DNA of 64,000 bases, from positions 283,393 through 347,392 of IMG/VR virus record IMGVR_UViG_3300042879_006196. One strand, written 5' to 3'. Positions 26,270 to 63,275 of the stretch are shown in pieces. Numbering within the stretch: the first letter of the stretch is position 1; every line of letters starts with the position of its first letter. Below the pieces are notes generated by a model, which saw nothing but the letters and a program-made list of their open reading frames with translations, was not told the DNA's origin and searched no databases. Made by a program: the position numbers and the translations under genes.

Positions 26270-26319
26270 ACACTATTTATACACCAGGAAAATATTGATG
26301 ATAAGTTTAAATTAATAAA

Positions 26320-27262: not shown

Positions 27263-27284
27263 GATGTAATTGTACAATCATAAC

Positions 27285-27578: not shown

Positions 27579-27597
27579 AAAAATTGTATAAAAGATA

Positions 27598-28101: not shown

Positions 28102-28104
28102 TAA

Positions 28105-29064
28105 ATGATTGAAGCCGTTGATGTAATTTTTGGTGCTTCTTGGGGAGACGAAGGTAAAGGGAAAATCTCCTCAAGAATTGCCAAAAACTATGATTATGTT
28201 TGTAGGTTTAATGGTGGCTCAAATGCTGGTCATACATTTTATGTCAATGACAAAAAAGTAATCACTCATGTCATCCCATCAGGAATTGCATTTAATATAC
28301 CATCAATCATTGGACCAAATTGTGTAGTTTGCATTGAAGAATTCTTTGCAGAGCTATCATATTTAGAGCATTTAGGCTTTAATCCTAAGCTAGTGAAGAT
28401 AAGTCCAAAAGCACATATTGTCACGCCTCATCATAAAGAACAAGATGCTAATTATTATTCAAAATTAATAGGTACCACTTCTAAAGGCATTGGTTTGTGT
28501 TATGCTGACAAGGCGCTTAGAACAGGTGTAAGAGCAGATACTGTTATGCCAAAGGAGTATCTCTGGGATGAAAAACTTGATGGTCATGTTCTTTGTGAGG
28601 GCGCACAATCGTTCTGGTTAGATATTAATCAGGGTTCATATCCTTATGTTACATCTTCAGAGTGTTTGCCATATGCTTCTTGTTCGTTGGGATTTTCTCC
28701 CAAAAAAATTCGTGACATTATAGCAGTAGCAAAAATGTATGATACACGATCTGGAGTGGATCCTTATTTTGATTTAGACGATGAAGAGACACAGTTGGTG
28801 GCTAAATTAGGAAATGAGTACGGAACCACCACAGGAAGAGCAAGACAGGTAAAATGGTTAAATCTTGATAAGTTGTCTTATGCTATTGAGAAAGCTGGCG
28901 CAAATATATTATATATGAACAAAGGCGATATTTTAGAAGAAGCAAAAATCTTTAAATTATATCATAATTCAGAATTATTGTCTTTCAGCGATATAGAAGA
29001 AATGAAAGCTTTTATACTTGAAAAAGTCAAAGAAGTTCAGATTGTGTGGGATTTTCAAGCTTAA
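28105..29064 (+). CDS. purA: Adenylosuccinate synthetase (short form)
   Basis: WGDEGKGK, GGSNAGHT, GTTSKGIG, EGAQ, YPYVTSS, EYGTTTGR. Confidence 0.92.
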   Translation: MIEAVDVIFGASWGDEGKGKISSRIAKNYDYVCRFNGGSNAGHTFYVNDKKVITHVIPSGIAFNIPSIIGPNCVVCIEEFFAELSYLEHLGFNPKLVKISPKAHIVTPHHKEQDANYYSKLIGTTSKGIGLCYADKALRTGVRADTVMPKEYLWDEKLDGHVLCEGAQSFWLDINQGSYPYVTSSECLPYASCSLGFSPKKIRDIIAVAKMYDTRSGVDPYFDLDDEETQLVAKLGNEYGTTTGRARQVKWLNLDKLSYAIEKAGANILYMNKGDILEEAKIFKLYHNSELLSFSDIEEMKAFILEKVKEVQIVWDFQA

Positions 29065-29082
29065 AATCCGTATATTAAATGT

Positions 29083-29919
29083 ATGGACATTAACGAACAA
29101 CTTTTTGAAATTAAAAAGCCCTATCTTAAAACTATCAATTGTCTCGACAAAGGTTTTGTCAGATTGGTGGATTGGATGGGTTCTGATCAAAGAATTGTTC
29201 AATCAGCTCGCGTGTCCTATGGCGATGGAACAAAAACTGTTCGTGAAGATAAAGGGTTAATTGATTATCTTATGCGACACGCACACACTTCGCCTTTTGA
29301 GCAAGTGAATTTCACTTTCCATGCTAAGATGCCAATCTTTGTGGCAAGGCAGATTGTCAGACACAGGACTGCCAAGTTAAATGAGATTTCAGGAAGATAT
29401 TCAATACTCAAGGACGAGTTTTATGAGCCCGATGTTTCTAGAATGGTAAAACAATCTAAAGACAACAAACAGGGCTCTTCTCAAGAATTACTTGAAGATG
29501 CTGAAAGCTTTCTGCAATCATTTAAGGATGAGCAATTTGAAATGTATGATAATTATGAAGAATACATTCAAGGTGGAATGGCAAAAGAAATGGCTCGTAT
29601 AAATCTTCCTTTGTCAATTTATACAGAGTGGTATTGGACTATTGATTTACACAATCTGTTTCATTTCTTAAAACTTAGAATGGATTCTCACGCTCAATAT
29701 GAAGTGAGAGTGTATGCAGACGCTAAATACAACCTGATAAAAGATATTGTGCCATTTGCTTGCGAATCATTTGAGCAACATGTGATCAATGGCAAAAAGT
29801 TTTCAAAAGATGAATTAGACATAATGAAAGAATTGATTCAGCACGAAGACATTAAAAGGTTAGCTGATCAAAGAAATTGGAAAGAATCTAAGGTAAATGA
29901 ATTCCTTAAAAAGATATAA
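29083..29919 (+). CDS. thyX: FAD-dependent thymidylate synthase
   Basis: HTSPFE, RHRTAKLNEISGRY, HAQYEVR. Confidence 0.95.
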   Translation: MDINEQLFEIKKPYLKTINCLDKGFVRLVDWMGSDQRIVQSARVSYGDGTKTVREDKGLIDYLMRHAHTSPFEQVNFTFHAKMPIFVARQIVRHRTAKLNEISGRYSILKDEFYEPDVSRMVKQSKDNKQGSSQELLEDAESFLQSFKDEQFEMYDNYEEYIQGGMAKEMARINLPLSIYTEWYWTIDLHNLFHFLKLRMDSHAQYEVRVYADAKYNLIKDIVPFACESFEQHVINGKKFSKDELDIMKELIQHEDIKRLADQRNWKESKVNEFLKKI

Positions 29920-30757
29920 AATAATTTTTTTAGTTCCTATATTTGAAAGAGAAGATTGTGTGGAAGATCTTATTCAAAATATACACACAATCTGCCCTAA
30001 TTCTGCAATTCTTTTTCACATAAATAGCAATTGCTCGCAAACATTTGTAGACAATATAAACAAGCTTAAAAACCATTATGATTTTTGTTACATTTTGCCC
30101 GAAAAATATCCATCTGAATGGGCTTCTGGTTTTTTAACAAACATTTACATACAAATGATGAATTGGTGTATTGAAAATGACATTTCAGATTATATTTACA
30201 TTACTCATTCTAATTCATTATTAATAAACCCAAAATTAGAATCATTCATTTATTCACATGAAATATTTTTTCCCTTACCTGGAACTAAACATTCTGGAGA
30301 TTGGTGGGAGAAAATATTATTAGATCAAAATATATTAGATTATGTGAAACCTTTAGGCGACATAATATATGTAACATCTATTGAAGGTGCTGCTATGAAT
30401 TTGAAAGTGGCTCAACATTTTGTTGATGATTTAATTAAAGTTATTCCTAATATTAATGTAGAGTATCCTTCGGAGGAATATTATATACCCACGTCATTTA
30501 TGAAAATCAAAGATAGATACAGATACATGAATTGTGCTTTGGAAAGGTGGGGGCATACAGTTGACCATGTTGTAAATGGATATAAGCTTGGAGTGAGTAA
30601 AAATGAGGAATACATTTTAAATATAGTTTTAAACAATCAATTTGATGTTTTATCTAAATTAAATCTTTATTCAATTAAAAAAATAGAAAGAAAATATAAT
30701 TACCCTTTTAGAGAGCTTTTAAGGAATCATTTTGGTTATAACAACGTAATATTTTAA
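29897..30757 (+). CDS. Hypothetical protein, glycosyltransferase-like
   Basis: Resembles 606..1421 (SN..I, YSIK/SVKR-type C-terminus). Confidence 0.45.
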   Translation: MNSLKRYKIIFLVPIFEREDCVEDLIQNIHTICPNSAILFHINSNCSQTFVDNINKLKNHYDFCYILPEKYPSEWASGFLTNIYIQMMNWCIENDISDYIYITHSNSLLINPKLESFIYSHEIFFPLPGTKHSGDWWEKILLDQNILDYVKPLGDIIYVTSIEGAAMNLKVAQHFVDDLIKVIPNINVEYPSEEYYIPTSFMKIKDRYRYMNCALERWGHTVDHVVNGYKLGVSKNEEYILNIVLNNQFDVLSKLNLYSIKKIERKYNYPFRELLRNHFGYNNVIF

Positions 30758-33702: not shown

Positions 33703-35009
33703 ATTGCAGTAATTAGAAAATATTCTACTATTTTTCTAAAACATGTAGGTGATAGCAAATATTAAACTGTAAAAGAACTATATGTTGAAAGCATATAAGT
33801 TTTTGATAAAACCTGCGAAAGAGCAAAGTGAGATGTTTGAAAAACATTTTGGCGCTGCTAGGTTTGTCTATAACTGGGGCTTAGAACAAAAAACAAAATC
33901 TTATCAAGAAGGAAAGAAAACATTGACTTTTCTTGGATTAGGACCAGAACTTGTTAAACTTAAAAAAGAAAACATCTGGATGAAAGAAGTTAATAGCCAA
34001 TCACTATTGGCTTCTCTAAAGAATTTAGACAATGCCTACACTAGATTCTTTCGAGAAAAGAAAGGATTTCCTAAATTTAAATCAAAATACAATCCAAAAC
34101 AATCCTTCCAATGCCCTCAACATTGTACTGTAGATTTTGAAAAAGGATTGCTAAATATCCCTAAAGTTAAAAATATCAAAACTGTATTCCACAGACAATT
34201 TGAAGGAGATATCAAAACTGTAACGATTTCTAAAGTGCCTTCTGGAAAATATTATGTTTCTATCCTTGTGGAAGATGGAAAGTCTTTACAAATTAAACCC
34301 AAACTTGACAGAAACGATGCAATAGGTATTGACATGGGATTGAAAGATTTTGTAGTTACTTCAGATGGAGATAAGATTGCTAATCCGAAATATCTCAGAA
34401 AATCCGAAGAACGACTTGCAAGAAGACAAAGAAAATTAAGTGTAAAAAAGAAAGGGAGCAATAATAGAAATAAACAACGTAAAAAAGTAGCAAAGCTACA
34501 TAAAAAAATAGCTAATCAAAGAAAAGACTTTCTGCATAAAGTATCTCATCAAATAGTTCACAAGAATCACGGAACGATTTGTGTTGAAGACTTGTGTGTT
34601 AAAGGGATGGTCAAAAATAGAAAATTAGCTAAATCAATATCTGATGCAGGATGGGGAATGTTCTATAATTTTCTGAAATACAAATCAGAATGGCATGGAA
34701 AGAATTTCCTTGATATTGGAAGATTTGAACCATCGAGCAAGATGTGTTCAGTCTGCGGGAATATCAAATCAGATTTGACATTATCTGATAGAGAATGGAT
34801 ATGTTCTAAATGTGAAACAAAACACGATAGAGATATCAATGCTTCAATTAATATTCGGAACATGGCATTCACTAATCAGAATTTGGTAAGATGTATAGGA
34901 CTGGAACAGCCCGAATCAACGCCTGTGGAGAAGAAAGCTCTGGTTAGAAATAATGAAACTATCTTCTGCGAAGCAGGAAGCCTCACCCCTTGTGGGTGAG
35001 GTAGTTCAC
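33668..35009 (+). mobile_element. TnpB-only IS200/IS605 (IS1341-type) element 1
   Basis: Left-end hairpin CCCCA..TGGGG; right-end hairpin CCTCACCC..GGGTGAGG followed by TAGTTCAC; ends shared with element 2. Confidence 0.85.
33782..34999 (+). CDS. tnpB: RNA-guided endonuclease TnpB
   Basis: GIDMG, VEDL, CSVC..CSKC, DRDINAS; RuvC triad intact. Confidence 0.95.
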   Translation: MLKAYKFLIKPAKEQSEMFEKHFGAARFVYNWGLEQKTKSYQEGKKTLTFLGLGPELVKLKKENIWMKEVNSQSLLASLKNLDNAYTRFFREKKGFPKFKSKYNPKQSFQCPQHCTVDFEKGLLNIPKVKNIKTVFHRQFEGDIKTVTISKVPSGKYYVSILVEDGKSLQIKPKLDRNDAIGIDMGLKDFVVTSDGDKIANPKYLRKSEERLARRQRKLSVKKKGSNNRNKQRKKVAKLHKKIANQRKDFLHKVSHQIVHKNHGTICVEDLCVKGMVKNRKLAKSISDAGWGMFYNFLKYKSEWHGKNFLDIGRFEPSSKMCSVCGNIKSDLTLSDREWICSKCETKHDRDINASINIRNMAFTNQNLVRCIGLEQPESTPVEKKALVRNNETIFCEAGSLTPCG

Positions 35010-38141: not shown

Positions 38142-38525
38142 GGGGCGCCCAGGCATTCGACAGAAGAGTATGGGTGTGCGTTGCATGTAGTGGGTGATTC
38201 TCCGGCCACTTCAAAAGAGAATCAAAAAATAAATGGCAAAAATGCTAAAAAGAATCGCAGAAATGGCTTTGGCTCTGCCCAAGCTGGCTTTGCAATGGTA
38301 GCCTAAGTGCTTCCTGGGGATACGTACAACCAAGCTAGTAGGGTGTCTATCTCTTAGAATAAAGTCTAGCTAAAAAACATCTATGATCGAATGATGTAAA
38401 AGCGATATGCAGATTGTGTGGATTTGTTATTTGTTCCTAACAATTTAAGAAAAAACAATAAACTAAACATGTAGTAACGTATATGACAGCTATTTTGGAA
38501 AGGGGTTCGACTCCCCTGCGCTCCA
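38142..38525 (+). ncRNA. ssrA: tmRNA (CCA not encoded)
   Basis: GGGGCGC/GCGCTCCA acceptor stem with G3:U70, TTCGAC near the 5' end, T-arm AGGGGTTCGACTCCCCT; tag ORF 38235-38306 GKNAKKNRRNGFGSAQAGFAMVA*. Confidence 0.92.
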
Positions 38526-38599
38526 AACTTTATTAAGGTATTTTCAGAAATACTTAGATTCAAATAGGTTCAAATTGTGAATTTCCTTAATATAGGTTT

Positions 38600-43155: not shown

Positions 43156-43677
43156 ATGAAAAATAATTTAAAAGCAATAGTTATGGACCTGGATGGAGTG
43201 GTTGTAAATAGCTCATCAAGGTTTAAAAGATTGAATCTTGATGCCTTTATTCGCAGAGATGCAAAAGCTTGGATAAAATCAGTGGAATGGTACAATGCTG
43301 ATTGCAGAGGCGATGAAGTGATTGATTTGGGTGTTGATTTACTTGAAATGCTATGCACATTTTACAAACCAGATTGTGTGTTTTTTATCACAGCTAGAGG
43401 GCATGGCGGATATAAACCCACTTTGCAATGGCTTAAAGATGAAGGGATTTGGAAAGAAGATTGTGTTTTGATTATGCAACCAGAAGATTTTGATAATTAC
43501 CACTTCTACACACAATCTGACCATGCTTCATATAAGAAAAAAGAAGCTCTGAAAATTATGGAAAATTATGAGATTGTGTATGCTGTGGACGATAGCGAAG
43601 ACAATGTTCAGGCATACAGAGATTTAAAAATTCCCACGCTGAAGTTTTGTGTGCCTATCGGAAGAGTGCTGGTTTAA
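43156..43677 (+). CDS. HAD phosphatase (PNKP 3'-phosphatase-like)
   Basis: DLDG, TAR, K, VDD. Confidence 0.75.
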   Translation: MKNNLKAIVMDLDGVVVNSSSRFKRLNLDAFIRRDAKAWIKSVEWYNADCRGDEVIDLGVDLLEMLCTFYKPDCVFFITARGHGGYKPTLQWLKDEGIWKEDCVLIMQPEDFDNYHFYTQSDHASYKKKEALKIMENYEIVYAVDDSEDNVQAYRDLKIPTLKFCVPIGRVLV

Positions 43678-43697
43678 TTTTTAATTTGGGTGAATGG

Positions 43698-44042
43698 ATG
43701 AGAAGAAAGATTAAAGATAGTGTGATTGAAAATTTAGAATGCGTTTGCCATTGTTTTTTAGCGCTATCTATGCTGATTAGTTTCTTCATTTCAATATTTT
43801 CTCTCCCTTCTTTTTTGCTAAGAGATATAGGACCTTTTACAAGAGACGTAGGAATAATTGCATTTATATGGTTCTTGATATCGCTTATATGTTTTAAAGT
43901 TAATGATACAAAAGGCTTCTTAAAATTTTTGCATAAAAGAAATGACAAAATAGATGAAGAAGAAAAAGCTAGACAGCAGGCTCTGCTTCTAGAAGCCGAA
44001 GAAAGAAACAGGGCTGAACTTCAGATTTGGGTGAATGGATGA
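43698..44042 (+). CDS. QIWV-array membrane protein 1
   Basis: Two TM segments, charged tail, QIWVNG. Confidence 0.75.
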   Translation: MRRKIKDSVIENLECVCHCFLALSMLISFFISIFSLPSFLLRDIGPFTRDVGIIAFIWFLISLICFKVNDTKGFLKFLHKRNDKIDEEEKARQQALLLEAEERNRAELQIWVNG

Positions 44043-44362
44043 GAAGAAAGATTAAAGATAGTGTGATTGATACTTTAGCAACCGTTTTGTTTTGCTTTCT
44101 TTTTCTATCTTGTCCGATTAGCTTTGTCATCTTTCTATGGTATGCCTCTGGGGACGTTTCTCCGTACATAACAGGAATTGCATTTATATATTTCTTGATA
44201 TCGCTTATAGGTAGTGCATTTTATAATATAGATGGCTCACTAAACTTTTTGCGTAAACGAAATGGCAAAATTGATGAAGAAGAAAAAGCTCAACTTCAAG
44301 CTAAAGCTCAAGCTGAAGCAGAAAGAACTAGAATTGAATCTCAGATTTGGGTGAGCGAATGA
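44039..44362 (+). CDS. QIWV-array membrane protein 2
   Basis: Paralog, ATGA overlap. Confidence 0.75.
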   Translation: MRRKIKDSVIDTLATVLFCFLFLSCPISFVIFLWYASGDVSPYITGIAFIYFLISLIGSAFYNIDGSLNFLRKRNGKIDEEEKAQLQAKAQAEAERTRIESQIWVSE

Positions 44363-44685
44363 AAAGAAAGTTAACTGAAAAGACAGAAGCTGCTTTAATT
44401 CTCTTTCTTTTTATTTTCCTTTTGCTATCTATTTTGATTAGCTTTTGCATCTCTGTACGTTGGTTCTTTTGGTGCAATAACTGGAACGTAGCACTAATTG
44501 CATTTATATGGTTCTTGATATCGTACAAATGTTTTGTAGGTTTTATATGGAACGATGGCATCTCAGACTTTTTGCATTCAAGAAATGACAAAATAGATGA
44601 AGAAGAAAAAGCTAGACAGCAGGCTCTGCTTCTGGAAGCTGAAGAAAGAAACAGGGCTGAACTTCAGATTTGGGTGAATGAATGA
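44359..44685 (+). CDS. QIWV-array membrane protein 3
   Basis: Paralog; 3' ~100 bp near-identical to gene 1. Confidence 0.75.
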   Translation: MKRKLTEKTEAALILFLFIFLLLSILISFCISVRWFFWCNNWNVALIAFIWFLISYKCFVGFIWNDGISDFLHSRNDKIDEEEKARQQALLLEAEERNRAELQIWVNE

Positions 44686-44993
44686 AAGACGGAAAGTATA
44701 CAAAAGAAGATAAAAGATATATGGAAAGTATGTGGATTGACTTTGGTGTTATACTTGTGTTTGCTATTCCATGCTGTTCTAATATACCTGGATTAGAAAA
44801 TTATGGGATTATTACAGGAATAATTCCTATCGTACTTTTTTTTGGTGTGATATTTTTAATTCGAAAGTATGTGCGCACACACAATCAAAAGATAGATAAA
44901 GAATTTCAAGCTGAACAGGAGAAAAAGGAAGCTGAACTTCAAGCTAAAGCAGACAAAGAAAAAGCTAATTCTCAGATTTGGGTGATCGAATGA
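44682..44993 (+). CDS. QIWV-array membrane protein 4
   Basis: Paralog. Confidence 0.75.
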   Translation: MKDGKYTKEDKRYMESMWIDFGVILVFAIPCCSNIPGLENYGIITGIIPIVLFFGVIFLIRKYVRTHNQKIDKEFQAEQEKKEAELQAKADKEKANSQIWVIE

Positions 44994-45382
44994 ATGAAAC
45001 TATTTGCTATATTTTTGTACCTATTTCTTTTTCTTTATTTTTTATTATTTTAGTAGGTTTTCTAAATCACTTTTCATTAATGGAAAACATTGAAGAAGAA
45101 GAAAAGAAAAAAACAATTAAAATGAGAGCAGAGGAAGAGAGAAAAAGACTTGAAATAGAAGCCGAAAAACTAAACTTGCACAACAAGCAATTAAAGCTTC
45201 ACCTAAAGATTTTGTTGAGCCAGTTCATGGAAAAAAGAATTAAAATAGAAGGAGAGAAAGCTCAACAGAAAGCTCGCCAGATTGCTCAACTTCAAGAAGA
45301 ACAACAAAGTCTTAGAATAAAGGCAGAAGAAGCTGAAGCAGAAAGAACTAGAACACAATCTCAGATTTGGGTGAATGAATGA
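44990..45382 (+). CDS. QIWV-array membrane protein 5
   Basis: One TM plus long coiled coil. Confidence 0.75.
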   Translation: MNETICYIFVPISFSLFFIILVGFLNHFSLMENIEEEEKKKTIKMRAEEERKRLEIEAEKLNLHNKQLKLHLKILLSQFMEKRIKIEGEKAQQKARQIAQLQEEQQSLRIKAEEAEAERTRTQSQIWVNE

Positions 45383-45615
45383 TTTCGGAATTGTATTCTG
45401 TATTTTCGGAGATGGACTTCTTTTCTAAGTTTTGCTTTTGTTTTGCTCTCTTTATGCTTGCATTACTCGTGTGGTGTTTCTTTATAACATTTATTCGAGA
45501 AGAAGCAGAAGAAGCAGAAGAGAGAAAAAGACTTGAAAAACAGGCAGAAGAAGAAAAACTTAAAATTGAAGCCGAAGAAAGAATAAGAGCTAATTCTCAA
45601 ATATGGGTGATTTGA
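45379..45615 (+). CDS. QIWV-array membrane protein 6
   Basis: One TM, QIWVI. Confidence 0.75.
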   Translation: MISELYSVFSEMDFFSKFCFCFALFMLALLVWCFFITFIREEAEEAEERKRLEKQAEEEKLKIEAEERIRANSQIWVI

Positions 45616-45657
45616 TTATGCAATTTTTCAATTTCAAGCGTATAAATAGGTGAGCAT

Positions 45658-50324: not shown

Positions 50325-52190
50325 TTAATCAACTACTTCAGCGTCCACAACATTAGGATCTATCACTTCTTCATTAGACCCTTGAACATTTTGGTACAAT
50401 ACTTCTGAAAGTTTATGTGAAACTTGCAGTAGGTTGTCTTTAGCTGTTTGAATTTGATTTTTGTCATTTGTTTTTAAAGCTTCTTTAGTTTTTTCTAAAG
50501 CTTCTTGAACATCATCAATCAAGTTTTGCTCTGCTTTATCTTTCGACATTTCAATCGTGGTTTCTATACTAGAGCACAAAGTTTCAGTCTCATTCTTCAA
50601 GAGAATAAACTCTTTTGCTTCTTTATCTGCTTCAGCATATTCTTCAGCCTCTTTGATCATTCGATCAATTTCATCTTTTTCCAAGTTCGAAGATTGTGTG
50701 ATTGTGATACTTTGCTCTTTGCCAGTTCCAAGATCTTTTGCTTTCACACTTAAAATACCATTGGCATCTAAAGAAAACTCCACTTCGATTTGTGGGATTC
50801 TTGCTGGCGCAGGAGCAATCCCCGAAAGATTGAACATACCCAAGCTTTTGTTGTCTTTGGCAATAGGTCTTTCGCCTTGTAAGATATGAATAGTAACCTC
50901 AGTCTGATTATTAACAGCAGTGGTATATACACTCTTTTTCTGTGTCGGAATAGTCGTGTTTTTTTCAATAAGCACATCAACCATTCCTCCATTTACTTCA
51001 ACACCCAAACTCAAAGGAGTGACATCTAAAAGAATAATGTCCTTGACATCTCCTGCCAAAATGCCTCCTTGAACTGCCGCTCCAAGAGCCACTGCCTCAT
51101 CAGGATTCACACCTTTAGATGGCTCTAAGCCTGTAATTTCCTTAATCAAACTTTGAACACAAGGGATTCGTGAACTACCACCAACAAGAATTACTTCATT
51201 AATCTTAGATTTGTCCACACCTTCCTTGAGAGCATTTAGCAATGGTTTTTTGATTCGATCCAAGAGGGGTTTCACCATAGATTCAAAATTAGCCTTAGTC
51301 AATTCTAAATCAACATGCAATGGATTTCCATCCACTGCTGTAATGTAAGGAAGATTTATTGATGTGGTTGCCTGTGAAGAAAGTTCAATTTTAGCTTTTT
51401 CTGAAGCTTCTTTCACTCTTTGCATTGCCGCTGAATCTTTGCTGATATCTACACCAGTAGATTTTTTTGTTTCAGAAACAATCCATTCCGATACTTTATT
51501 ATCAAAATCATCTCCACCTAAATGACTATCTCCTGAAGTGCTCAAAACCTCAAATGTTCCATCACCAATATCGAGAATAGAAACATCAAAAGTTCCTCCA
51601 CCAAGGTCGAAAACCAAAATATAACCTTCTTTATCCTTGCTTACACCATAAGCCAAAGCCGCAGCTGTTGGCTCATTGATGATTCTCACTACTTCAAGCC
51701 CAGCAATTTCTCCTGCATTTTTTGTAGCTTGTCTTTGTGAGTCATCAAAGTAAGCAGGGACAGTAATCACTGCTTTACTAACAGTGGTTCCTAAGTAACT
51801 TTCAGCATCCACTTTAATTTTTTGAAGAACTGCCGCTGAAATTTCTTCTGGTGTAAAATCTTTACCCACCGCAGGAATTTCAATTACAGCTAAGCCCTTT
51901 TTGTTTTTCTTAACCTTATAACTAACTTTACCCACTTCATTAGAAATCTCATCATACTTGTGTCCCATAAAACGCTTGACAGATGAGATTGTGTTTTTGT
52001 GATTAGTGACAGCACTCCGTTTTGCAGAAATGCCAACAATCCGCTCACCATCTTTTTTCCACGATACTACGGAAGGAATAGTTCTATTTCCTTCAGATGA
52101 CGAAATCACTTTAGCTTCACCAGCTTCCATGATAGCAACGCACGAATTAGTCGTGCCAAGGTCGATTCCTAATATGTATTCTTTTGCCAT
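50325..52190 (-). CDS. dnaK: Chaperone DnaK (Hsp70)
   Basis: GIDLGTTNS, TVPAYF, DLGGGTFD, LVGGSSRIP, DAEVVD; start set 12 nt after TGTATA. Confidence 0.97.
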   Translation of the reverse strand: MAKEYILGIDLGTTNSCVAIMEAGEAKVISSSEGNRTIPSVVSWKKDGERIVGISAKRSAVTNHKNTISSVKRFMGHKYDEISNEVGKVSYKVKKNKKGLAVIEIPAVGKDFTPEEISAAVLQKIKVDAESYLGTTVSKAVITVPAYFDDSQRQATKNAGEIAGLEVVRIINEPTAAALAYGVSKDKEGYILVFDLGGGTFDVSILDIGDGTFEVLSTSGDSHLGGDDFDNKVSEWIVSETKKSTGVDISKDSAAMQRVKEASEKAKIELSSQATTSINLPYITAVDGNPLHVDLELTKANFESMVKPLLDRIKKPLLNALKEGVDKSKINEVILVGGSSRIPCVQSLIKEITGLEPSKGVNPDEAVALGAAVQGGILAGDVKDIILLDVTPLSLGVEVNGGMVDVLIEKNTTIPTQKKSVYTTAVNNQTEVTIHILQGERPIAKDNKSLGMFNLSGIAPAPARIPQIEVEFSLDANGILSVKAKDLGTGKEQSITITQSSNLEKDEIDRMIKEAEEYAEADKEAKEFILLKNETETLCSSIETTIEMSKDKAEQNLIDDVQEALEKTKEALKTNDKNQIQTAKDNLLQVSHKLSEVLYQNVQGSNEEVIDPNVVDAEVVD

Positions 52191-52247
52191 ATAAATAATA
52201 TACAAAAAAATAATAAAAAAAGTTGCTTTTTTTTCATACTTAAATCA

Positions 52248-57989: not shown

Positions 57990-59315
57990 GTGAACTACCT
58001 CACCCATAAAGGGAGAGGCTTCCTGTTTCATAGTCGTTAGCAACCTAACAATTCCACAGGCGTTGATTCGGCTTGTTCCAAGCCTATAAATCTCATTAAA
58101 TTTTGACGATTGAATGCCATTTCTTTAATGTTGATAGCAGCATTAATATCACGATCATGTGTAACTCCACAAGGACATTGCCATACACGATCTTTTAATG
58201 TTAATTCTCGATTGACATAGCCACAGATAGAACAAGTTTTTGAACTAGGTTCAAATCTTCCAATATCTAATAACCATTTCCCATTCCATTCACATTTATA
58301 TTCTAAAAATGAACGAAACATTCCCCATCCTACATCGGATATGGATTTTGCTAATCTATGATTTCTGATCATTCCTTGTGTGTTTAAATCTTCTATACAT
58401 AACACATCAATTTGGTTCTCATTAACGAGTTCATGTGAGATTTTATGAAGGAAATCTTTTCTTTGATTAGAAACTTTTTCATGTAACTTAGCGAGTTTTA
58501 CTCGCTGTTTGTTTTGATTATTACTACCTTTATTCATTCTTGAAAATCGACGTTGCATTCGTTTTAATTTTTCTTCTGACTTTTTAAGGAAACGTGGATT
58601 ATTAATTTTGTCACCTTCCGACGTAATAACAAAATGTGTCAATCCAAGATCAACACCTATAGCTCTGTCTTTGTTGAGTTCTGGTTTAGCAGGAATATTT
58701 TCATCAATTTCAACTAATATAGAAGCATAATATTTTCCAGTAGATGATTTACTAATTGTAATTGATTTAACTTTTCCTTCAAAATGACGATGCAAAACAG
58801 CTTTAATATTTTTAGCTTTAGGAATTGAAATTGTATTTAATTCAAAATCCACAACACACGATTGAGGATTCATAAATGAAGACTTACTGAATTTCTTGCT
58901 TTTAAATTTTGGAAATCCTTTCTTTTCTTTAAAGAATCTACTAAATGCAGAATCCAAATTAGCAGTTACAGCTTGTAACGCTTGTGAATTAACATTTGTC
59001 AGCCAATGGTGTTCTTCTTTAAGTTCTTTAAGTTTTGCATCCATTTCAAATTTAGTTAATTTCTGTTTTCCATTCACATACATTTCTGTTTTCAGTTCAA
59101 GAAAATAATTATATACAAATCTCGCACAACCAAAAGAACTTTCAATTAATTGAATTTGCTCTTGATTAGGTTTGATTCTATACTTATATGCCTTAAACAT
59201 ATAAATAATTTCTGCTTATTTTCTAGTCACACCTATTTTTCGACTAGAAATTTTATAATATTTTTTAATAATTCAGCAATTCATCCCCACTGACGAGCAG
59301 ATGGGGCTTTCTTGC
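57990..59315 (-). mobile_element. TnpB-only IS200/IS605 element 2
   Basis: Same left- and right-end hairpins and GTAGTTCAC end as element 1. Confidence 0.85.
58037..59200 (-). CDS. tnpB: RNA-guided endonuclease TnpB
   Basis: GVDLG, IEDL, CSIC..CPC, DRDINAA. Confidence 0.95.
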   Translation of the reverse strand: MFKAYKYRIKPNQEQIQLIESSFGCARFVYNYFLELKTEMYVNGKQKLTKFEMDAKLKELKEEHHWLTNVNSQALQAVTANLDSAFSRFFKEKKGFPKFKSKKFSKSSFMNPQSCVVDFELNTISIPKAKNIKAVLHRHFEGKVKSITISKSSTGKYYASILVEIDENIPAKPELNKDRAIGVDLGLTHFVITSEGDKINNPRFLKKSEEKLKRMQRRFSRMNKGSNNQNKQRVKLAKLHEKVSNQRKDFLHKISHELVNENQIDVLCIEDLNTQGMIRNHRLAKSISDVGWGMFRSFLEYKCEWNGKWLLDIGRFEPSSKTCSICGYVNRELTLKDRVWQCPCGVTHDRDINAAINIKEMAFNRQNLMRFIGLEQAESTPVELLGC

Positions 59316-59535
59316 AGGTATATTGTAAATGATGATGGCTCTGTTGAGTACGATTGGATGTTTGACAAAAATGCATTTTCGTTGACCATATATCCAGATG
59401 GCAAAGTAGGATATGCTTACTTGATTGGAAATATTTCTGATTGCGGTGTTTCTTATTTGGAAGATGGCAATTTGCCTGATTTTATTACAAACAAGATTCA
59501 AGAACTTTCCACACAATCTGAGCGTATAAAAATTA

Positions 59536-59706
59536 ATGAAAAAAAATCTTGTTAGTATTTTGTTGGTTTTTCTTTTTGCGCCCGCATTCATTCTCGCCTA
59601 CATGATTTTATTTGGCTTTGAACCATCAAATCCACAGTGTTTCGCCGCGTTTTTATTGTGTTTTTCTGGCGCAGTGGTTTTGTTTTGGCGGGATCAGAGT
59701 GATTAG
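59536..59706 (+). CDS. Small two-TM membrane protein (56 aa, not in track)
   Basis: MKKNLVSILLVFLFAPAF...; follows the promoter module. Confidence 0.55.
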   Translation: MKKNLVSILLVFLFAPAFILAYMILFGFEPSNPQCFAAFLLCFSGAVVLFWRDQSD

Positions 59707-60160
59707 TAAACTCGAAACCAAAACAATACTTTGTGCCGCGTTTCCTGGCACTGGCAAAACATTTATCTGTAATAATTCAAAACTAAAAGCAATTGAAGTG
59801 GAATTTTGGCAGTATGAAAGCCAAAAACAATACATTCAAGATATTAAAGCATTGATAGGTGAAGTAGATTTTGTATTCCTATCCACTGAAATAGATGGTT
59901 TACAGCTTTTGCATAATGAAGGTCTTGAAATTTTCCTTGTTTATCCTCAAAAGAATTTGAGGAATGAATATTTAGACAGATATATTGAAAGAGATAACCC
60001 ATATGATTTCATAGGCACGATGATGAAATTTTGGGACACTACTATTGAAAAACTTCAAGAGCAAAAGTATTGTAAACACTTCGTTTTAGGAAAAAATCAA
60101 TATTTGAGCGATATTCTTCATTTACTCAGTAAACCCTCCACACAATCTGAGCGTATATAA
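59699..60160 (+). CDS. P-loop-like conserved phage protein
   Basis: AAFPGTGKT; LVYP...EYLDRY..R; start uncertain. Confidence 0.6.
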   Translation: MISKLETKTILCAAFPGTGKTFICNNSKLKAIEVEFWQYESQKQYIQDIKALIGEVDFVFLSTEIDGLQLLHNEGLEIFLVYPQKNLRNEYLDRYIERDNPYDFIGTMMKFWDTTIEKLQEQKYCKHFVLGKNQYLSDILHLLSKPSTQSERI

Positions 60161-60164
60161 GACT

Positions 60165-60500
60165 ATGGGTATGTTCACAAGGATAAAAGTAAATAACAAC
60201 AAGTTTATTCAAATATATTGTGGTGGTGATATGTTGAAAACTTACGAAATTGGAGATTCCGTTCCCTATTGTTTATATGTTGAAAAAACTCGTTTTGAAT
60301 GTTTTGCTGATGGTGCTTATAAGGGTTTTTGCGAAGATAAAAATGATGACAATCATTATTGGGTGATAATTAAAAATTCAAAAGTTGAAACGGTGCTTTG
60401 CCAAAACAATATAGTTTTCGAGCGTGACGAGTATAAAAGTTTATATGAAGATACTTTGGATTTTTTGATTAAAAAATATAATTTACCACAAGTTCTGTAG
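60165..60500 (+). CDS. Hypothetical protein
   Basis: MGMF start after the promoter module. Confidence 0.6.
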   Translation: MGMFTRIKVNNNKFIQIYCGGDMLKTYEIGDSVPYCLYVEKTRFECFADGAYKGFCEDKNDDNHYWVIIKNSKVETVLCQNNIVFERDEYKSLYEDTLDFLIKKYNLPQVL

Positions 60501-60539
60501 TTTTCGAACCTTCCACACAATCTGAGCGTATAAAATAAT

Positions 60540-60794
60540 ATGCATTTGTGGTTCACTGCTTATAATCCAAAAACAAAAGAAGCATGCAATGTGTTTGTGG
60601 TTGGAAGTGCAATAGATGGTGTGTACGAGGAAGATTTGTTGAGAGCTTTTTTGACAAAAAACGTTGAGCAAGATTTAGTGCTTAGCAATAGTGACGAGCT
60701 TTTAGACCGTGTGTACGATGAAGGCGGGGTTCATCTAAACAGACTATCAATAACTGAAAAAGAAAAATATATTAAATCTGTATACAGTAATTAA
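60540..60794 (+). CDS. Hypothetical protein
   Basis: Follows the promoter module. Confidence 0.6.
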   Translation: MHLWFTAYNPKTKEACNVFVVGSAIDGVYEEDLLRAFLTKNVEQDLVLSNSDELLDRVYDEGGVHLNRLSITEKEKYIKSVYSN

Positions 60795-60887
60795 TGTTAA
60801 CAATTTCGTGGCTAGGAGGTGAAAATATAATTTACCACAAGCTCTGTAGTTTGCAACTTTCCACACAATCTGAGCGTATAAAATAAT

Positions 60888-61388
60888 ATGTCAACAAGTG
60901 CTAAAACAAATATATTCGTTGCAGTTTCCCAAAAATATTTTGAGCATTCTAAATCCGAAAAAGGTTCAGAAGTCACTAGATATGACACTATAACTGGTAA
61001 ACCTTTTCAAGTAGAAATCAAAAATGTTTCCTATAACATAGGACAATTGAACTTTCCAGATGCTGAAAATTTACTTCAAATTGAAGAAGCTTTGAATAAT
61101 GAAGAAACACCTGAGGGAAATGACTTATCCGATGGATATTTATGTTTTCTTCAAGATGATAGTCCAACATTTATAAAAATGAGTGACTATAATTATTGGG
61201 GTGATTATGATGGAGAATTTGGTATTGGTTATGAATTGTTCGGTCAATATGCCAATAGTCACTTAGAGATTGATGAATTAGATTATAATTTAATTCCAAA
61301 CTCTATTTTAAAGTTAAAGCAATGGTTCAAAGAAAATTTGAATCTAGATGTCAGTCCCACTTGCTATGTTGTTACATCTCTTGGTTAA
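60888..61388 (+). CDS. Hypothetical protein
   Basis: Follows the promoter module. Confidence 0.6.
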   Translation: MSTSAKTNIFVAVSQKYFEHSKSEKGSEVTRYDTITGKPFQVEIKNVSYNIGQLNFPDAENLLQIEEALNNEETPEGNDLSDGYLCFLQDDSPTFIKMSDYNYWGDYDGEFGIGYELFGQYANSHLEIDELDYNLIPNSILKLKQWFKENLNLDVSPTCYVVTSLG

Positions 61389-61399
61389 TTGATTTCAAA

Positions 61400-61474
61400 A
61401 ATTTCGTGGCGAGGAGGTGATTGTGCCACGTTTATGCCAGGGTGAAAAATCCCTGGCTTTTTTTTTGCAACTTT
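61400..61474 (+). terminator. SD-in-loop hairpin plus intrinsic terminator, copy 1
   Basis: CGTGGC-gAGGAGGTGATtgt-GCCACG, then GCCAGGG..CCCTGGC-T9. Confidence 0.8.
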
Positions 61475-61499
61475 TTAAACAATCTAATCGTATAGAATC

Positions 61500-61817
61500 T
61501 TGATGAAGAAATTAATCACTTTAACAGTTCTTGCCATTTCTGGCATTTCGTTGATGGCTTGTGGGATTGAAAATTCGGAAAATCCAAACGCGCAAGCGTA
61601 TTCAAATTCCACTTCTACCGTGAACCACATAGTTACACCAGGCGTCTCCTCAGCGAGTATTCCACTTCCAACCAGAAGAACTAGTACTTCAACTAGCACT
61701 CCAGCTATGAGATCAAGCGTGTCATCGTCAATGCGATCAAGTGCTCCATCTGTGAGAATGAGCACTCCAGCTCCATCTTTCAGGTCTTCTTTTAGTCCAT
61801 CTGTGAGGAGTAGATAA
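61500..61817 (+). CDS. Ser/Thr-rich lipoprotein
   Basis: LMAC lipobox, low-complexity tail. Confidence 0.6.
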   Translation: MMKKLITLTVLAISGISLMACGIENSENPNAQAYSNSTSTVNHIVTPGVSSASIPLPTRRTSTSTSTPAMRSSVSSSMRSSAPSVRMSTPAPSFRSSFSPSVRSR

Positions 61818-61818
61818 G

Positions 61819-62709
61819 ATGTTTTCAGTCATTCTTTTTCTCGCAATTATCGCTCTTGTGGTGGGTTTTGTTATGCCTTCTAAAGACGACGATGATCTTT
61901 CTGCGATTGCAAAGTGGCTCAAATCAATCTCTCTTGTCTTAATCATCTTGAGCGTATTTGGTAGTGCTTATTTCTCAGTACCTGCGGGGTACAGAGGTGT
62001 GCTGTTGAATTTCGGAGCAGTTAAGGGCGTTATGGGCGAGGGTGTGCAATTTGTCATTCCTTTTGTTCAGAAAGTAGAACTCATGGAAGTGAGAACGCAA
62101 AAAGAAGAAGCTAAAGCCGCCGCCGCGTCTAAGGACTTGCAAAATGTTAGCACCACCGTTGCTATTAACTATCACCTTAATCCTTTGCAAGTGGGTAATC
62201 TCTACAAAAACGTGGGTCTTGACTTTGCAAGTAGAATTATTGACCCTGCTACACAGGAAACCGTTAAAGCTGTAGTTGCCAATTACACTGCCGAAGAATT
62301 AATTAGGTTGAGAAGCAAAATTAAAAATGAAATTGATACTATGCTTACTGAGCGATTAAAAGCTTATGACATTGTTGTTGAAAATAACGGTGTGTCTTTG
62401 ACAAATTTCGAGTTTTCTCAAGATTTCAACAGAGCAATTGAACAAAAGCAGGTGGCACAACAATCGGCTGAAAAATCGAAGTATGAACTTCAAAAGGCTG
62501 AAATTGATGCCAAAACAGCTATTGCCAGAGCAGAGGGTGAAGCTAGATCAAACAAAATCAAGGCTGAAGCTCTCAACCAAAATGGTGGATCTAAAGTTCT
62601 TGCCAGAGAATGGATTGAGAAGTGGGATGGACATTTGCCACAAGTCTCTGCGAATGGTAACATGATGTTCAACATTGATAGTTTAATGAAGGAAGCTAAT
62701 TCCAAGTAA
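61819..62709 (+). CDS. SPFH/prohibitin (band 7) protein
   Basis: VPAGYRGV..FG, ASKDLQ, AIEQKQ, IEKWDG.LP. Confidence 0.9.
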   Translation: MFSVILFLAIIALVVGFVMPSKDDDDLSAIAKWLKSISLVLIILSVFGSAYFSVPAGYRGVLLNFGAVKGVMGEGVQFVIPFVQKVELMEVRTQKEEAKAAAASKDLQNVSTTVAINYHLNPLQVGNLYKNVGLDFASRIIDPATQETVKAVVANYTAEELIRLRSKIKNEIDTMLTERLKAYDIVVENNGVSLTNFEFSQDFNRAIEQKQVAQQSAEKSKYELQKAEIDAKTAIARAEGEARSNKIKAEALNQNGGSKVLAREWIEKWDGHLPQVSANGNMMFNIDSLMKEANSK

Positions 62710-62717
62710 GCTATAAC

Positions 62718-62794
62718 AATTTCGTGGCTAGGAGGTGATTGTGCCACGTTTGTGCCAGGGTGAAAAATCCCTGGCTTTTTTTTTTGCAACTTTT
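62718..62794 (+). terminator. SD-in-loop hairpin plus intrinsic terminator, copy 2
   Basis: Near-identical to the 61400 copy. Confidence 0.8.
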
Positions 62795-62820
62795 CCTCTC
62801 TTTGATTCGTATATATACGT

Positions 62821-63243
62821 ATGTTCACTGCAATAATGGCGAGCATACTGTTATGTAGCCAAAAATCGGTAGGACAAGGCAAGCCGCCTGTTCAAAAAGC
62901 CAAAACAAGCAATGTTTCAAAACTTGCTAATTCAAACAAACAATACAAAGCAAACTTTTTAGTTACTGCTTACTCTACTCATCCTAGCGAAAATGGTGGT
63001 TATACTATCACTTCTACAGGAAAAAAATTAGGTGAAGGTATTGTTGCTGTAGACCCAAAAGTTATCCCGATGGGAAGTAAAATTCACATACCAGGTTACG
63101 GATGGGGTGTTGCCGCTGATGTAGGTGGTGCTATTAAAGGTAGACATATTGATGTGTGTTTATCCTCGCGTGGTAGTGTAGGAAGATGGGGGCGTAAAAA
63201 GCTTAATATCACGGTTATACCGAAAACCAAAACTACCAAATAA
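62821..63243 (+). CDS. 3D-domain (MltA-like) protein
   Basis: VTAY, VAVDP.VIP.GS, ADVGGAIKG.HID. Confidence 0.9.
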   Translation: MFTAIMASILLCSQKSVGQGKPPVQKAKTSNVSKLANSNKQYKANFLVTAYSTHPSENGGYTITSTGKKLGEGIVAVDPKVIPMGSKIHIPGYGWGVAADVGGAIKGRHIDVCLSSRGSVGRWGRKKLNITVIPKTKTTK

Positions 63244-63247: not shown

Positions 63248-63275
63248 TGGGCGGTTTACCGCCCATTTTTCTTTT
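63248..63275 (+). terminator. Intrinsic terminator
   Basis: TGGGCGGT-tt-ACCGCCCA followed by T run. Confidence 0.8.

What the first reader, a model, noticed from the sequence alone, without database searches (positions are those of the whole stretch)
60802..62790. Perfect Shine-Dalgarno displayed in a hairpin loop in 3' UTRs just before a terminator
Seen: CGTGGC-n-AGGAGGTGAT-tgt-GCCACG at 61405-61430 and 62723-62748, with a truncated copy at 60807-60822. Each lies 12-16 nt after a stop codon, and the two full copies are 5 nt before a strong terminator. AGGAGGTGAT is a 10-nt complement of the 16S rRNA 3' end, yet the only downstream start (GTG) runs into the terminator. Inference: a 30S-binding decoy or stabiliser that could bias translation toward the phage's leaderless mRNAs, or a CsrA/RsmA-type GGA-loop sponge released as a 3' UTR small RNA.
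Basis: partly seen in the sequence, partly recalled or inferred. Interest (0 to 1): 0.7.

Follow-up and report, generated by a model that had tools for sequence, protein, structure and literature searches.

The report
Conserved Shine-Dalgarno-displaying RNA hairpin in phage
A 347-kb freshwater jumbo phage, whose own genes mostly lack ribosome-binding sites, keeps a tiny non-coding element that shows a perfect ribosome-binding sequence in a hairpin loop just before a terminator. It most likely binds the host small ribosomal subunit rather than starting a protein, and no expression data could be found to confirm this.

Summary
TTTCGTGGCnAGGAGGTGA occurs three times in the window and nowhere else in the 347-kb phage genome. 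Two full copies are a 6-bp hairpin with AGGAGGTGAT in a 14-nt loop, then 5 nt, then an intrinsic terminator.

About 40 copies in near relatives are invariant except for the T-run (6-12 T). Relatives whose neighbouring 3D-domain protein is only 55-84% identical still carry GGAGGTGAT next to a hairpin. Their stems differ (CGUGGC/GCCACG, GCGUGG/CCACGC, GCGAGAGAU/AUUUCUCGU). Candidate start codons are lost (GTG to GCG or GTT; ATG to ACG). The putative ORF is 14-39 codons with no conserved frame.

So this is a conserved non-coding element that displays a Shine-Dalgarno (SD) sequence, not a gene start. In several lineages a promoter-like box precedes it, suggesting a stand-alone RNA of about 60 nt.

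The copies also mark gene-cassette breakpoints, like T4 PeSL elements.

Best reading (confidence 0.4): the RNA pairs with the 16S 3' tail and titrates 30S subunits, in a phage whose genes are mostly SD-independent. Ribosome-controlled read-through of the adjacent terminator is the main rival. No RNA data were obtainable and the host is unknown.

The parts
60798..60822 (+). Copy A, truncated: TAACAATTT + 5' arm CGTGGC + T + AGGAGGTGA. The 3' arm and terminator are missing. It is fused at GTGA|AAATATAA to a promoter cassette.
   Evidence: (D15). Relatives L018, L028-L030 and L134 have a full copy after the same 84-aa gene. Copy A is therefore a recombination junction.
60850..60890 (+). Promoter-like block TTTGCAACTTTCCACACAATCTGAGCGTATAAAATAAT abutting the ATG of the 166-aa gene. 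It belongs to a 5-6 member repeat family spanning 59498-62823.
   Evidence: (D5). Population contigs join at these blocks (60135->60859).
61405..61430 (+). Copy B hairpin 1: 6-bp stem CGUGGC/GCCACG with the 14-nt loop G-AGGAGGUGAU-UGU (SD at 61412-61421).
   Evidence: Covariation in relatives.
61436..61466 (+). Copy B intrinsic terminator: GCCAGGG-UGAAAAAU-CCCUGGC (61436-61457) plus T9 (61458-61466).
61464..61505 (+). Promoter-like block (TTTGCAAC...CGTATAGAAT) abutting the ATG at 61503 of the lipoprotein-like gene.
   Evidence: (D5).
62712..62722 (+). TATAAC box plus AATTT directly before copy C. It has the same geometry as the box that abuts a gene start in L032 (cgTATAACaatgtATG). It is a candidate promoter for the element itself.
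   Evidence: This is inference; no transcription start data exist.
62723..62748 (+). Copy C hairpin 1: CGUGGC/GCCACG with loop U-AGGAGGUGAU-UGU (SD at 62730-62739).
62754..62785 (+). Copy C intrinsic terminator: stem-loop 62754-62775 plus T10 (62776-62785).
62784..62823 (+). Promoter-like block (TTTGCAAC...CGTATATATAC) abutting the ATG at 62821 of the 3D-domain gene.
   Evidence: It is conserved upstream of the 3D gene in relatives.
61503..62709 (+). Gene cassette between copies B and C: a lipoprotein-like gene (61503-61817) and an SPFH/Band-7 gene (61819-62709). It is present or absent as a unit among relatives.
   Evidence: Pfam and PHROGs. Absent in L012-L023 with a single hybrid copy. Population joint 61394->62714.
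60888..61388 (+). 166-aa ORFan cassette flanked by copy A (5' half) and copy B. Absent in L018, L028-L030 and L134.
62821..63243 (+). 3D-domain (cell-wall hydrolase-type) gene. In most lineages the element sits just upstream of it.
   Evidence: Pfam PF06725. Synteny.

Best explanation
The element is a small conserved non-coding RNA module. It has a short hairpin whose 14-nt loop presents a 9-12-nt perfect complement of the 16S rRNA 3' tail (core GGAGGUGAU). A Rho-independent terminator follows immediately.

The RNA would be made in two ways: as the 3' end of the upstream mRNA (window copies A and B), and probably as a stand-alone transcript of about 55-65 nt from a promoter-like box that abuts the hairpin (window copy C, L025, L027, L032, L033).

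Most likely it works in trans by pairing with the anti-SD of host 30S subunits without productive initiation. That would occupy ribosomes that would otherwise start on SD-led messages. Most of the phage's own genes have a promoter box abutting the ATG, or have no SD, and would be spared.

Separately, at the DNA level, the repeated hairpin-terminator-promoter cassettes act as homology patches where small gene cassettes are gained and lost.

Shown: the anatomy, conservation of the SD core, covarying stems, absence of a conserved ORF, rarity of SDs in the genome, and breakpoints at the repeats.
Inferred: transcription, 30S binding and the decoy effect.
For: 1. The motif is unique and non-random: 3 copies against 0.02 expected, with none elsewhere in the genome.
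2. The SD is displayed: opening energy is 0.9-1.7 kcal/mol in 6 of 7 variants, and the predicted duplex with GAUCACCUCCUUA is -16.7 to -20 kcal/mol.
3. Deep conservation: GGAGGTGAT is the only invariant block across window B and C, L025, L132, L032, L027 and L033. The neighbouring 3D protein is only 55-84% identical in these relatives. L032 extends the match to 12 nt, TAAGGAGGTGAT.
4. The stems covary. 5 of 9 pairs change on both sides, 2 of 500 shuffles reach this, and slid registers score lower. In L132 the stem shifts out by one pair.
5. It is not coding. The ORF is 14-39 codons and ends from -33 to +38 relative to the next ATG, because the T-run varies from 6 to 12. GTG becomes GCG or GTT, and ATG becomes ACG.
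6. It is not tied to one gene. In L025 the intact copy lies between the SPFH gene and a 156-aa gene, while the 3D-proximal copy has lost its 5' arm and its SD has decayed to AGGATGTGAT. Every covered genome keeps at least one intact copy. This pattern fits a trans-acting product.
7. Promoter-type boxes identical to those abutting gene starts precede the element in four lineages.
8. Genome context: the ATG is abutted by a TATA box in 31% of ORFs (control 4.5%), and an SD of 5 nt or more occurs in only 10% (control 3%). The phage also encodes bS21, which sits beside the SD-anti-SD helix, and a tmRNA.
9. In 160 control loci with distant 3D genes, GGAGGTGAT occurs only as this element, as a true RBS, or inside genes.
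Against: - There is no expression evidence. No RNA run holds the locus.
- With 1-3 copies per genome, the RNA would have to accumulate to ribosome-like numbers.
- About 10% of phage genes use an SD, one of them a 9-nt SD (genome 89353). A decoy would hit these as well.
- A 10-bp helix cannot form inside a closed 14-nt loop without strain or melting of the 6-bp stem.
- The host is unknown, so host dependence on SDs is only inferred, from the positional SD enrichment in phage genes.
- The covariation rests mainly on one lineage (L032).
- The constant closeness of the SD to the terminator, and the conserved loop of hairpin 2, are not explained by a decoy.
Confidence: 0.4

Rival explanations
1. 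Ribosome-dependent control of the adjacent terminator, acting in cis. A 30S subunit captured by the strong SD covers the 5' arm of the terminator, so the hairpin cannot form and transcription reads through. A ribosome translating a short ORF of arbitrary sequence from a nearby start could do the same. Read-through would then report the availability of free ribosomes.
For: - In every lineage the terminator's 5' arm starts 8-18 nt after the GGAGG core, inside a 30S footprint.
- In L025 the next gene's ATG lies 3 nt after the T-run with no promoter box, so it needs read-through.
- Some ATG, GTG or TTG always lies 2-9 nt after the SD core.
- The loop of hairpin 2 (UGAAAWAU) is conserved in four lineages despite different stems.
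Against: - In most lineages a promoter box follows the terminator, so the downstream gene does not need read-through.
- The start codon type, spacing (often 2-4 nt) and frame are not conserved.
- Three lineages give the element its own promoter box and then a second box for the 3D gene, which is odd for an attenuator.
- In L025 the copy next to the 3D gene has decayed while another copy stays intact.
- No alternative antiterminator pairing is evident.
Confidence: 0.2
2. A purely DNA-level cassette, like a T4 PeSL. The hairpin-terminator-promoter repeat serves as transcriptional insulator and homology patch for shuffling ORFan cassettes. The SD would be a leftover RBS with no RNA function.
For: - Gene content differs exactly at the repeats. 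The lipoprotein+SPFH cassette and the 166-aa cassette are each present or absent, leaving hybrid or half copies.
- Population contigs join 61394->62714 and at the promoter blocks.
- PeSLs are defined as composite promoter plus stem-loop terminator elements flanking ORFans, with crossovers even inside the loop.
Against: - A vestigial RBS should decay. Instead the 9-nt core is invariant while the stems, flanks and start codons change across lineages with 55-60% protein identity.
- The copy that lost its hairpin arm did decay.
- Other terminators in the region lack the SD hairpin (63248-63265).
Confidence: 0.12
3. An RNA stabiliser of the STAB-SD type. A 30S subunit parked on a non-initiating SD, together with the two hairpins, shields the transcript end from ribonucleases. 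This would raise the half-life of the upstream mRNA, or of read-through RNA downstream.
For: - A non-initiating SD that binds 30S to stabilise RNA is an established principle (Bacillus thuringiensis cry3A STAB-SD, reviewed in PMC4113751, listed; the phage SP82 stabiliser, from memory).
- The SD is accessible and lies next to a stable 3' hairpin.
Against: - STAB-SD elements act from the 5' region against 5'-to-3' decay. In window copies A and B, and in the copies that follow ORFs in near relatives, the element sits after the ORF and only about 50 nt of RNA follow it.
- In lineages with their own promoter box there is no mRNA to protect.
- The host's RNase set is unknown.
Confidence: 0.12
4. A binding site for a protein rather than the ribosome. 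Candidates are a CsrA/RsmA-type regulator (GGA in a hairpin loop) or a phage RNA-binding protein or nuclease that recognises GGAG.
For: - The loop contains A-N-GGA in a hairpin, the CsrA preference (from memory).
- T4 RegB cuts GGAG in SD sequences (from memory).
Against: - Each unit has only one GGA site, whereas known sponges carry many.
- Conservation covers GGAGGUGAU, matching the 16S tail beyond what CsrA or RegB need.
- The phage genome has no CsrA or RegB homologue. The RegB model also found nothing in the controls, so that negative is weak.
Confidence: 0.06
5. The SD is the RBS of a real small protein that starts at the GTG (VPRLCQGEKSLAFF...).
For: The SD-to-GTG spacing of 5 nt is workable. 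In window copy B the ORF's TGA overlaps the next gene's ATG (TGATG).
Against: - The ORF is 14-39 codons, and its C-terminus and end point change with T-run length.
- The TGATG overlap occurs only in the window copy.
- GTG is replaced by GCG (L025) and GTT (L132).
- No ORF is shared with L027, L032 or L033.
Confidence: 0.03

Closest known systems
PeSL elements (promoter-early stem-loop) of T4-type phages (Arbiol et al. 2010, PMC2839356; Comeau et al. 2014, PMC4122927)
   Same: Both are short composite intergenic cassettes combining a stem-loop terminator with a promoter. Both are repeated in a region of small ORFan genes and sit exactly at insertion, deletion and replacement breakpoints between close relatives. 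Crossovers can fall inside the loop, as in window copy A.
   Different: In a PeSL the SD lies at the 3' end and serves the downstream gene. Here the SD lies upstream of the terminator, inside a separate hairpin loop, serves no gene, and is conserved far beyond the repeat itself. The promoter boxes are not sigma-70 consensus, and the phage is not detectably T4-like.
STAB-SD / polypurine 5' stabilisers (B. thuringiensis cry3A; Bacillus phage SP82)
   Same: Both have an SD-like sequence with no associated start codon that is thought to act by binding the 16S 3' end.
   Different: Those elements lie in 5' leaders and protect downstream mRNA from 5'-to-3' decay. This one sits in a hairpin loop just before a terminator, after ORFs or as its own tiny unit.
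Oligonucleotides complementary to the 16S 3' end that inhibit initiation in vitro (classical experiments, from memory), and ribosomes lacking the anti-SD that favour leaderless mRNA (MazF 'stress ribosome' proposal, contested, from memory)
   Same: All rest on the same idea: blocking or removing the anti-SD shifts translation away from SD-led messages towards leaderless ones.
   Different: Those are artificial oligonucleotides or an rRNA-cleavage mechanism. A natural phage-encoded anti-SD-binding RNA has not been described to my knowledge.
3' UTR-derived small RNAs and sponge RNAs (for example CsrB/RsmZ for CsrA, 6S RNA for RNA polymerase)
   Same: Each is a small structured RNA ending in the mRNA's terminator that presents a binding motif in a loop. 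The logic is to titrate a core machine by mimicking its normal ligand.
   Different: The presumed ligand here is the ribosome's anti-SD. Each RNA has one motif. No Rfam family matches.

Membership tests
PeSL (T4-type mobile regulatory cassette) | Composite of a stem-loop terminator and an adjacent promoter in an intergenic spacer | tested here: met
   Terminators are called at 61436-61457 and 62754-62775. Each is followed within about 10 nt by a repeated promoter-like block abutting the next ATG.
PeSL (T4-type mobile regulatory cassette) | The promoter is a strong sigma-70-type early promoter | tested here: not met
   Sigma-70 -35/-10 pairs are not enriched (14 found, 17.5 expected). The boxes are -10-like only and lie 3-6 nt from the ATG.
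PeSL (T4-type mobile regulatory cassette) | Copies flank ORFans and mark indel or replacement breakpoints between close relatives | tested here: met
PeSL (T4-type mobile regulatory cassette) | The SD within the cassette serves the downstream gene | tested here: not met
   The SD lies upstream of the terminator, 85-135 nt from the next ATG, with no conserved ORF.
STAB-SD type mRNA stabiliser | SD-like sequence complementary to the 16S 3' end with no functional start codon | tested here: met
   Complementarity is 9-12 nt, and the start codons are not conserved.
STAB-SD type mRNA stabiliser | Located in the 5' untranslated leader of the mRNA it stabilises | tested here: not met
   It is located after stop codons and 5 nt before a terminator, or in a unit with no ORF.
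Leader-peptide transcription attenuator | A conserved short ORF whose translation chooses between terminator and antiterminator structures | tested here: not met
   There is no conserved ORF and no alternative antiterminator pairing in the folds.
CsrA/RsmA sponge RNA | Multiple GGA motifs in hairpin loops or single-stranded stretches | tested here: not met
   Each unit has one GGA-containing loop, and the loop of hairpin 2 lacks GGA.
CsrA/RsmA sponge RNA | A cognate CsrA-family protein is present | tested here: inconclusive
   None is found in the phage genome. The host is unknown.
Any Rfam family | A match at the family's gathering score | tested here: not met
   Only the tmRNA elsewhere in the window passes. 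In the region itself the best match is VqmR at 24.7 bits against a gathering score of 76.
Stand-alone small RNA gene | Own promoter, defined 5' end, terminator, and detectable transcript | tested here: inconclusive
   A promoter-type box and a terminator are present in four lineages. No transcript data are available.

The most novel reading that the evidence does not exclude
A phage-encoded ribosome decoy. An abundant RNA of about 60 nt has a loop that pairs with the anti-Shine-Dalgarno tail of host 16S rRNA. It would shut down SD-dependent (host) initiation while the phage's promoter-abutted, SD-independent genes keep being translated. It may act together with the phage's own bS21 protein. 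This would be a translational counterpart of 6S RNA.
Probability: 0.3. Interest if true: 0.85.

Novelty: new variant of a known kind. Interest (0 to 1): 0.62.

Why it matters
If the RNA binds 30S subunits, it would be the first natural example of a virus targeting the anti-Shine-Dalgarno sequence with an RNA mimic of a ribosome-binding site. It would give a direct mechanism for how a phage with mostly SD-less or leaderless-type genes could bias translation towards itself.

It would also link to the unexplained presence of bS21 in large phages. That protein sits beside the SD-anti-SD helix.

The element is small (about 60 nt), so it is easy to test in vitro. It could be reused as a tool to tune SD-dependent translation.

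Independently of this, the locus shows that shuffling of gene cassettes through promoter-terminator repeats, described for T4-type phages, also operates in an unrelated freshwater jumbo phage lineage.

Tried and rejected
- **Conserved peptide or translational coupling from the GTG: rejected.** ORF length, frame and end vary with T-run length, and the GTG is lost in two lineages.
- **Mini-ORF (A/G)TG-CCA-GGG-TGA inside the terminator arm: rejected.** The start becomes ACG in L025, and L032 has no in-frame start.
- **Exact-motif scan of IMG/VR.** No hits.
- **SPFH-based relatives L001 and L002.** These are unrelated phages with ordinary SDs.
- **Megablast of the region against GenBank phages.** No match.
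- **Pattern 'promoter box + SD core' in IMG/VR.** It returned only ordinary promoter-RBS-ORF starts of other phages.
- **Covariance model of hairpin 1.** It found no further copies in the genome or in relatives beyond the known ones. It did not reach L027 or L033.
- **RNA evidence.**
  - The 'RNA?' runs X1-X4 are probably DNA and gave only structural joints.
  - The true metatranscriptomes X5-X7 hold nothing.
  - No other RNA run was listed.
- **Host identification.**
  - TnpB relatives (49% identity or less) are scattered over phyla.
  - The DnaK atlas search was uninformative.
  - The Pol IV tblastn search was uninformative.
  - No T4-type terminase domains were found.
  - bS21 resembles Firmicutes and Proteobacteria proteins more than Flavobacterium. 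It lacks the C-terminal aromatic residue described for Bacteroidetes bS21 phages, and its gene context differs. So this phage does not belong to those clades.
- **RegB and CsrA homologues in the phage.** None were found.
- **Complementarity of the loop to the phage's CCCCCUCC hairpins.** Considered and judged inferior to the 16S match, because the conserved GUGAU extension fits only 16S.
Full report
**What is there.** The window is the last 64 kb of a single-contig virus record of 347,392 bp with 33.6% GC. The sequence TTTCGTGGCnAGGAGGTGA occurs at 60804, 61402 and 62720 on the + strand. That is 3 matches against 0.02 expected, and there are no others in the genome (covariance model).

Copies B (61397-61466) and C (62715-62784) are 96% identical over 70 nt. 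Each has three parts:
- a 6-bp hairpin CGUGGC/GCCACG enclosing a 14-nt loop, n-AGGAGGUGAU-UGU;
- a 5-nt linker;
- an intrinsic terminator, GCCAGGG-UGAAAAAU-CCCUGGC, followed by T9 or T10.

Copy A (60798-60822) keeps only the 5' arm and the SD. The elements begin 12, 16 and 13 nt after stop codons. Each full copy is followed by a repeated promoter-like block that abuts the next ATG.

**Genome context.**
- Among 356 crude ORFs, a TATA-type box lies 3-6 nt before the ATG in 31%, against 4.5% at internal control ATGs.
- An SD match of 5 nt or more is present in about 10% of ORFs, against 3% at controls.
- AGGAGG as such is not enriched.
- The element's 10-nt complement of the 16S tail is the longest in the genome. 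The only other 9-nt match (genome 89353, minus strand) is a real RBS in front of a membrane-protein gene.
- The phage encodes a bS21 homologue, a tmRNA and a DnaK.

The phrase 'leaderless' is an inference from the geometry of the boxes. No transcription start has been mapped.

**Near relatives.** The flanking 166-aa and 3D-domain proteins have many relatives at 90-99% identity in freshwater lake metagenomes. Thirty-three copies from 22 sources (21 loci plus the window) fall into 15 sequence versions.
- Hairpin 1, the SD loop and the terminator stem-loop are invariant apart from the first loop base, two linker positions, and one G-C to G-U change.
- The T-run ranges from 6 to 12.
- As a result, the ORF opened by the GTG 5 nt after the SD core is 14-39 codons long. 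It ends anywhere from 33 nt before to 38 nt after the next ATG.
- The TGATG overlap seen in window copy B is not conserved.

There is therefore no conserved peptide and no conserved coupling geometry.

**Diverged relatives.** Homologues of the 3D-domain protein at 55-84% identity gave loci from other lineages.

| Locus | Relative of 3D protein | What is there |
|---|---|---|
| L025 | 84% | CGUGGC-A-AGGAGGUGAUUGC-GCCACG, then the terminator. GTG has become GCG, and the linker ATG/GTG has become ACG. |
| L132 | 94% (tblastn) | GCGUGG-UUAGGAGGUGAUUGUU-CCACGC. The stem has shifted out by one pair, and GTG has become GTT. |
| L032 | 59% | A different 9-bp stem, GCGAGAGAU/AUUUCUCGU, around a 14-nt loop, AAGGAGGUGAUUUG. 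With the preceding U of the stem this makes a 12-nt 16S complement. A covarying second hairpin, CCGGGG/CCCCGG, follows. |
| L027 | 60% | UGGAGGUGAU next to CCUGGAG/CUCCAGG. |
| L033 | 55% | UGGAGGUGAU 4 nt before AGGGCUUUA/UAAAGCCCU plus a T-run. |

In an alignment of the seven variants, the only invariant block is GGAGGTGAT. On an ungapped hairpin-1 alignment, 5 of 9 pairs change on both sides. Only 2 of 500 shuffles reach that value, and slid registers score far lower. These changes come essentially from L032, so this is one independent event plus the L132 shift.

The SD is the most accessible window, or among the five most accessible, in 6 of 7 variants (0.9-1.7 kcal/mol). The predicted duplex with a 16S tail is -16.7 to -20 kcal/mol.

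In 160 control loci carrying distant 3D genes, GGAGGTGAT appears only as this element, as a genuine RBS, or inside genes. Rfam has no family for it.

**3' UTR or its own gene.** In L027, L032 and L033 a box of the form cgTATAAT/TATATA...AAG lies just upstream of the element. Boxes of the same type abut gene starts in those same genomes. Window copy C and the L025 copy have TATAAC-AATTT directly before the hairpin. That is the same geometry as cgTATAAC-aatgt-ATG at a gene start in L032. A transcription start at the base of hairpin 1 would give an RNA of about 55-65 nt. Copies A and B have only a partial box and would be made as 3' ends of the upstream mRNAs. None of this could be checked with RNA data.

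**DNA-level behaviour.** Gene content differs between relatives exactly at the repeats.
- The lipoprotein+SPFH cassette between copies B and C is absent in L012-L017 and L019-L023, which carry a single hybrid copy.
- The 166-aa cassette is absent in L018, L028-L030 and L134, where a full copy follows the 84-aa gene.
- Window copy A is the half-element left at that junction.
- Population contigs show the joint 61394->62714 and joints at the promoter blocks.

This is the behaviour described for PeSL cassettes in T4-type phages. However, the promoter type and the role of the SD do not match PeSLs.

**Mechanism.** The conserved block covers GGAGG plus UGAU. That fits the 16S 3' tail (…GAUCACCUCCUUA, from established knowledge), and no other candidate partner I examined fits as well. 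Pairing with the anti-SD is therefore the most economical reading, at about 0.6. What the pairing achieves is less certain.

I favour a trans-acting decoy (0.4) for three reasons:
- Several lineages appear to give the element its own promoter and terminator.
- Its position relative to genes is not fixed.
- In L025 the copy beside the 3D gene has lost an arm and its SD has decayed, while an intact copy persists elsewhere. That is the pattern expected when the product, not the place, is under selection.

The main rival (0.2) is ribosome-dependent read-through. The terminator's 5' arm always lies 8-18 nt after the SD core, within a 30S footprint. One downstream gene in L025 has no promoter of its own. 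The conserved loop of hairpin 2 (UGAAAWAU in four lineages) remains unexplained.

Lesser rivals are a purely recombinational or insulating cassette, a stabiliser of the STAB-SD type, and a protein-binding site.

**Limits.**
- The host is unresolved.
- The phage bS21 is closer to Firmicutes and Proteobacteria proteins than to Flavobacterium. It lacks the aromatic residue noted in the Bacteroidetes bS21 phages of Chen et al. 2022.
- SD motifs in phage genes peak at -12 to -8, which suggests that host ribosomes can use an SD. This is an inference.
- The phage's own SD-led minority of genes, the low copy number, and the topological strain of a 10-bp helix inside a 14-nt loop all argue against a simple sponge.

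Noticed in passing
window 38142-38526 (+): A phage-encoded tmRNA (Rfam 108 bits) with an unusual tag peptide, AKKNRRNGFGSAQAGFAMVA, ending in MVA rather than the usual LAA.
   Followed up: no
genome G000:C1:86263-86448 (-), outside the window (L024:1483-1665): A phage bS21 homologue of 61 aa. Its best PDB matches are Lactococcus, Staphylococcus, Bacillus and Pseudomonas bS21, while Flavobacterium bS21 scores only E=1.5e-3. It has no aromatic residue near the C-terminus. Its neighbours are a tRNA nucleotidyltransferase and a glycosyltransferase, not the structural genes reported for other bS21 phages.
   Followed up: partly
genome G000:C1, about 44,000-68,000 (outside the window): About 35 small genes are each preceded by a near-identical cassette, CCCCCTCC-AAA-GGGGAGG (a hairpin pairing an anti-SD-like arm with an SD-like arm), then TTTTTCCAGGTTTAACA-N9-TATAAT-N4-ATG. 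Many carry the inverted repeat TCAGATTGTG...CACAATCTGA around the upstream box, which looks like an operator.
   Followed up: partly
window 59498-62823 (+): A second promoter-like family (CCACACAATCTGAGCGTATAAAAT-N3-ATG) precedes five or six consecutive small genes. It shares the CACAATCTGA motif with the cassettes at 44-68 kb. Sigma-70 -35/-10 pairs are not enriched, so a phage-specific polymerase or factor may read these boxes.
   Followed up: partly
genome G000:C1:89340-89365 (-): This is the only other long SD in the genome. TATAAT is followed directly by AGGAGGTGAAAC-ATG of a membrane-protein gene, so the SD would sit at or near the 5' end of that transcript.
   Followed up: no
window 58037-59200 (-) and 33782-34999 (+); L015, L016, L025: TnpB/IS605 OrfB genes are present. 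In relatives, TnpB copies are inserted at different places right next to the 3D-domain gene, so this neighbourhood is also a hotspot for IS200/IS605-type elements.
   Followed up: no
window 50325-52205 (-): A full-length DnaK/Hsp70 homologue, about 50-54% identical to cellular and other phage-borne DnaK proteins.
   Followed up: no
window 43651-45616 (+): Seven copies of a unit of about 320 nt, each ending in ...CAGATTTGGGTGAATGAATGA. They look like a run of small paralogous genes with overlapping stop and start codons.
   Followed up: no
window 61443-61450 and 62761-62768; L025, L027, L032: The loop of the terminator hairpin (UGAAAAAU, UGAAAUU, UGAAAUAU, UGAAAUAUU) is conserved in four lineages although the stems differ. 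That is unusual for a plain terminator, and none of my models explains it.
   Followed up: partly
L031:2920-3000: In a more distant relative, the 3D-domain gene is preceded by a promoter box, a 14-bp hairpin without an SD, and a strong terminator. The ATG lies 4 nt after the T-run. This looks like a leader that must be read through, so regulation of this gene by an upstream terminator may be older than the SD loop.
   Followed up: no
genome G000:C1, about 25,000-30,500 (L214): A repetitive stretch rich in CAGGTG/GGTGAGG/GGTGTGG units, which gave a weak chance hit to the hairpin model. It probably encodes a repeat protein.
   Followed up: no
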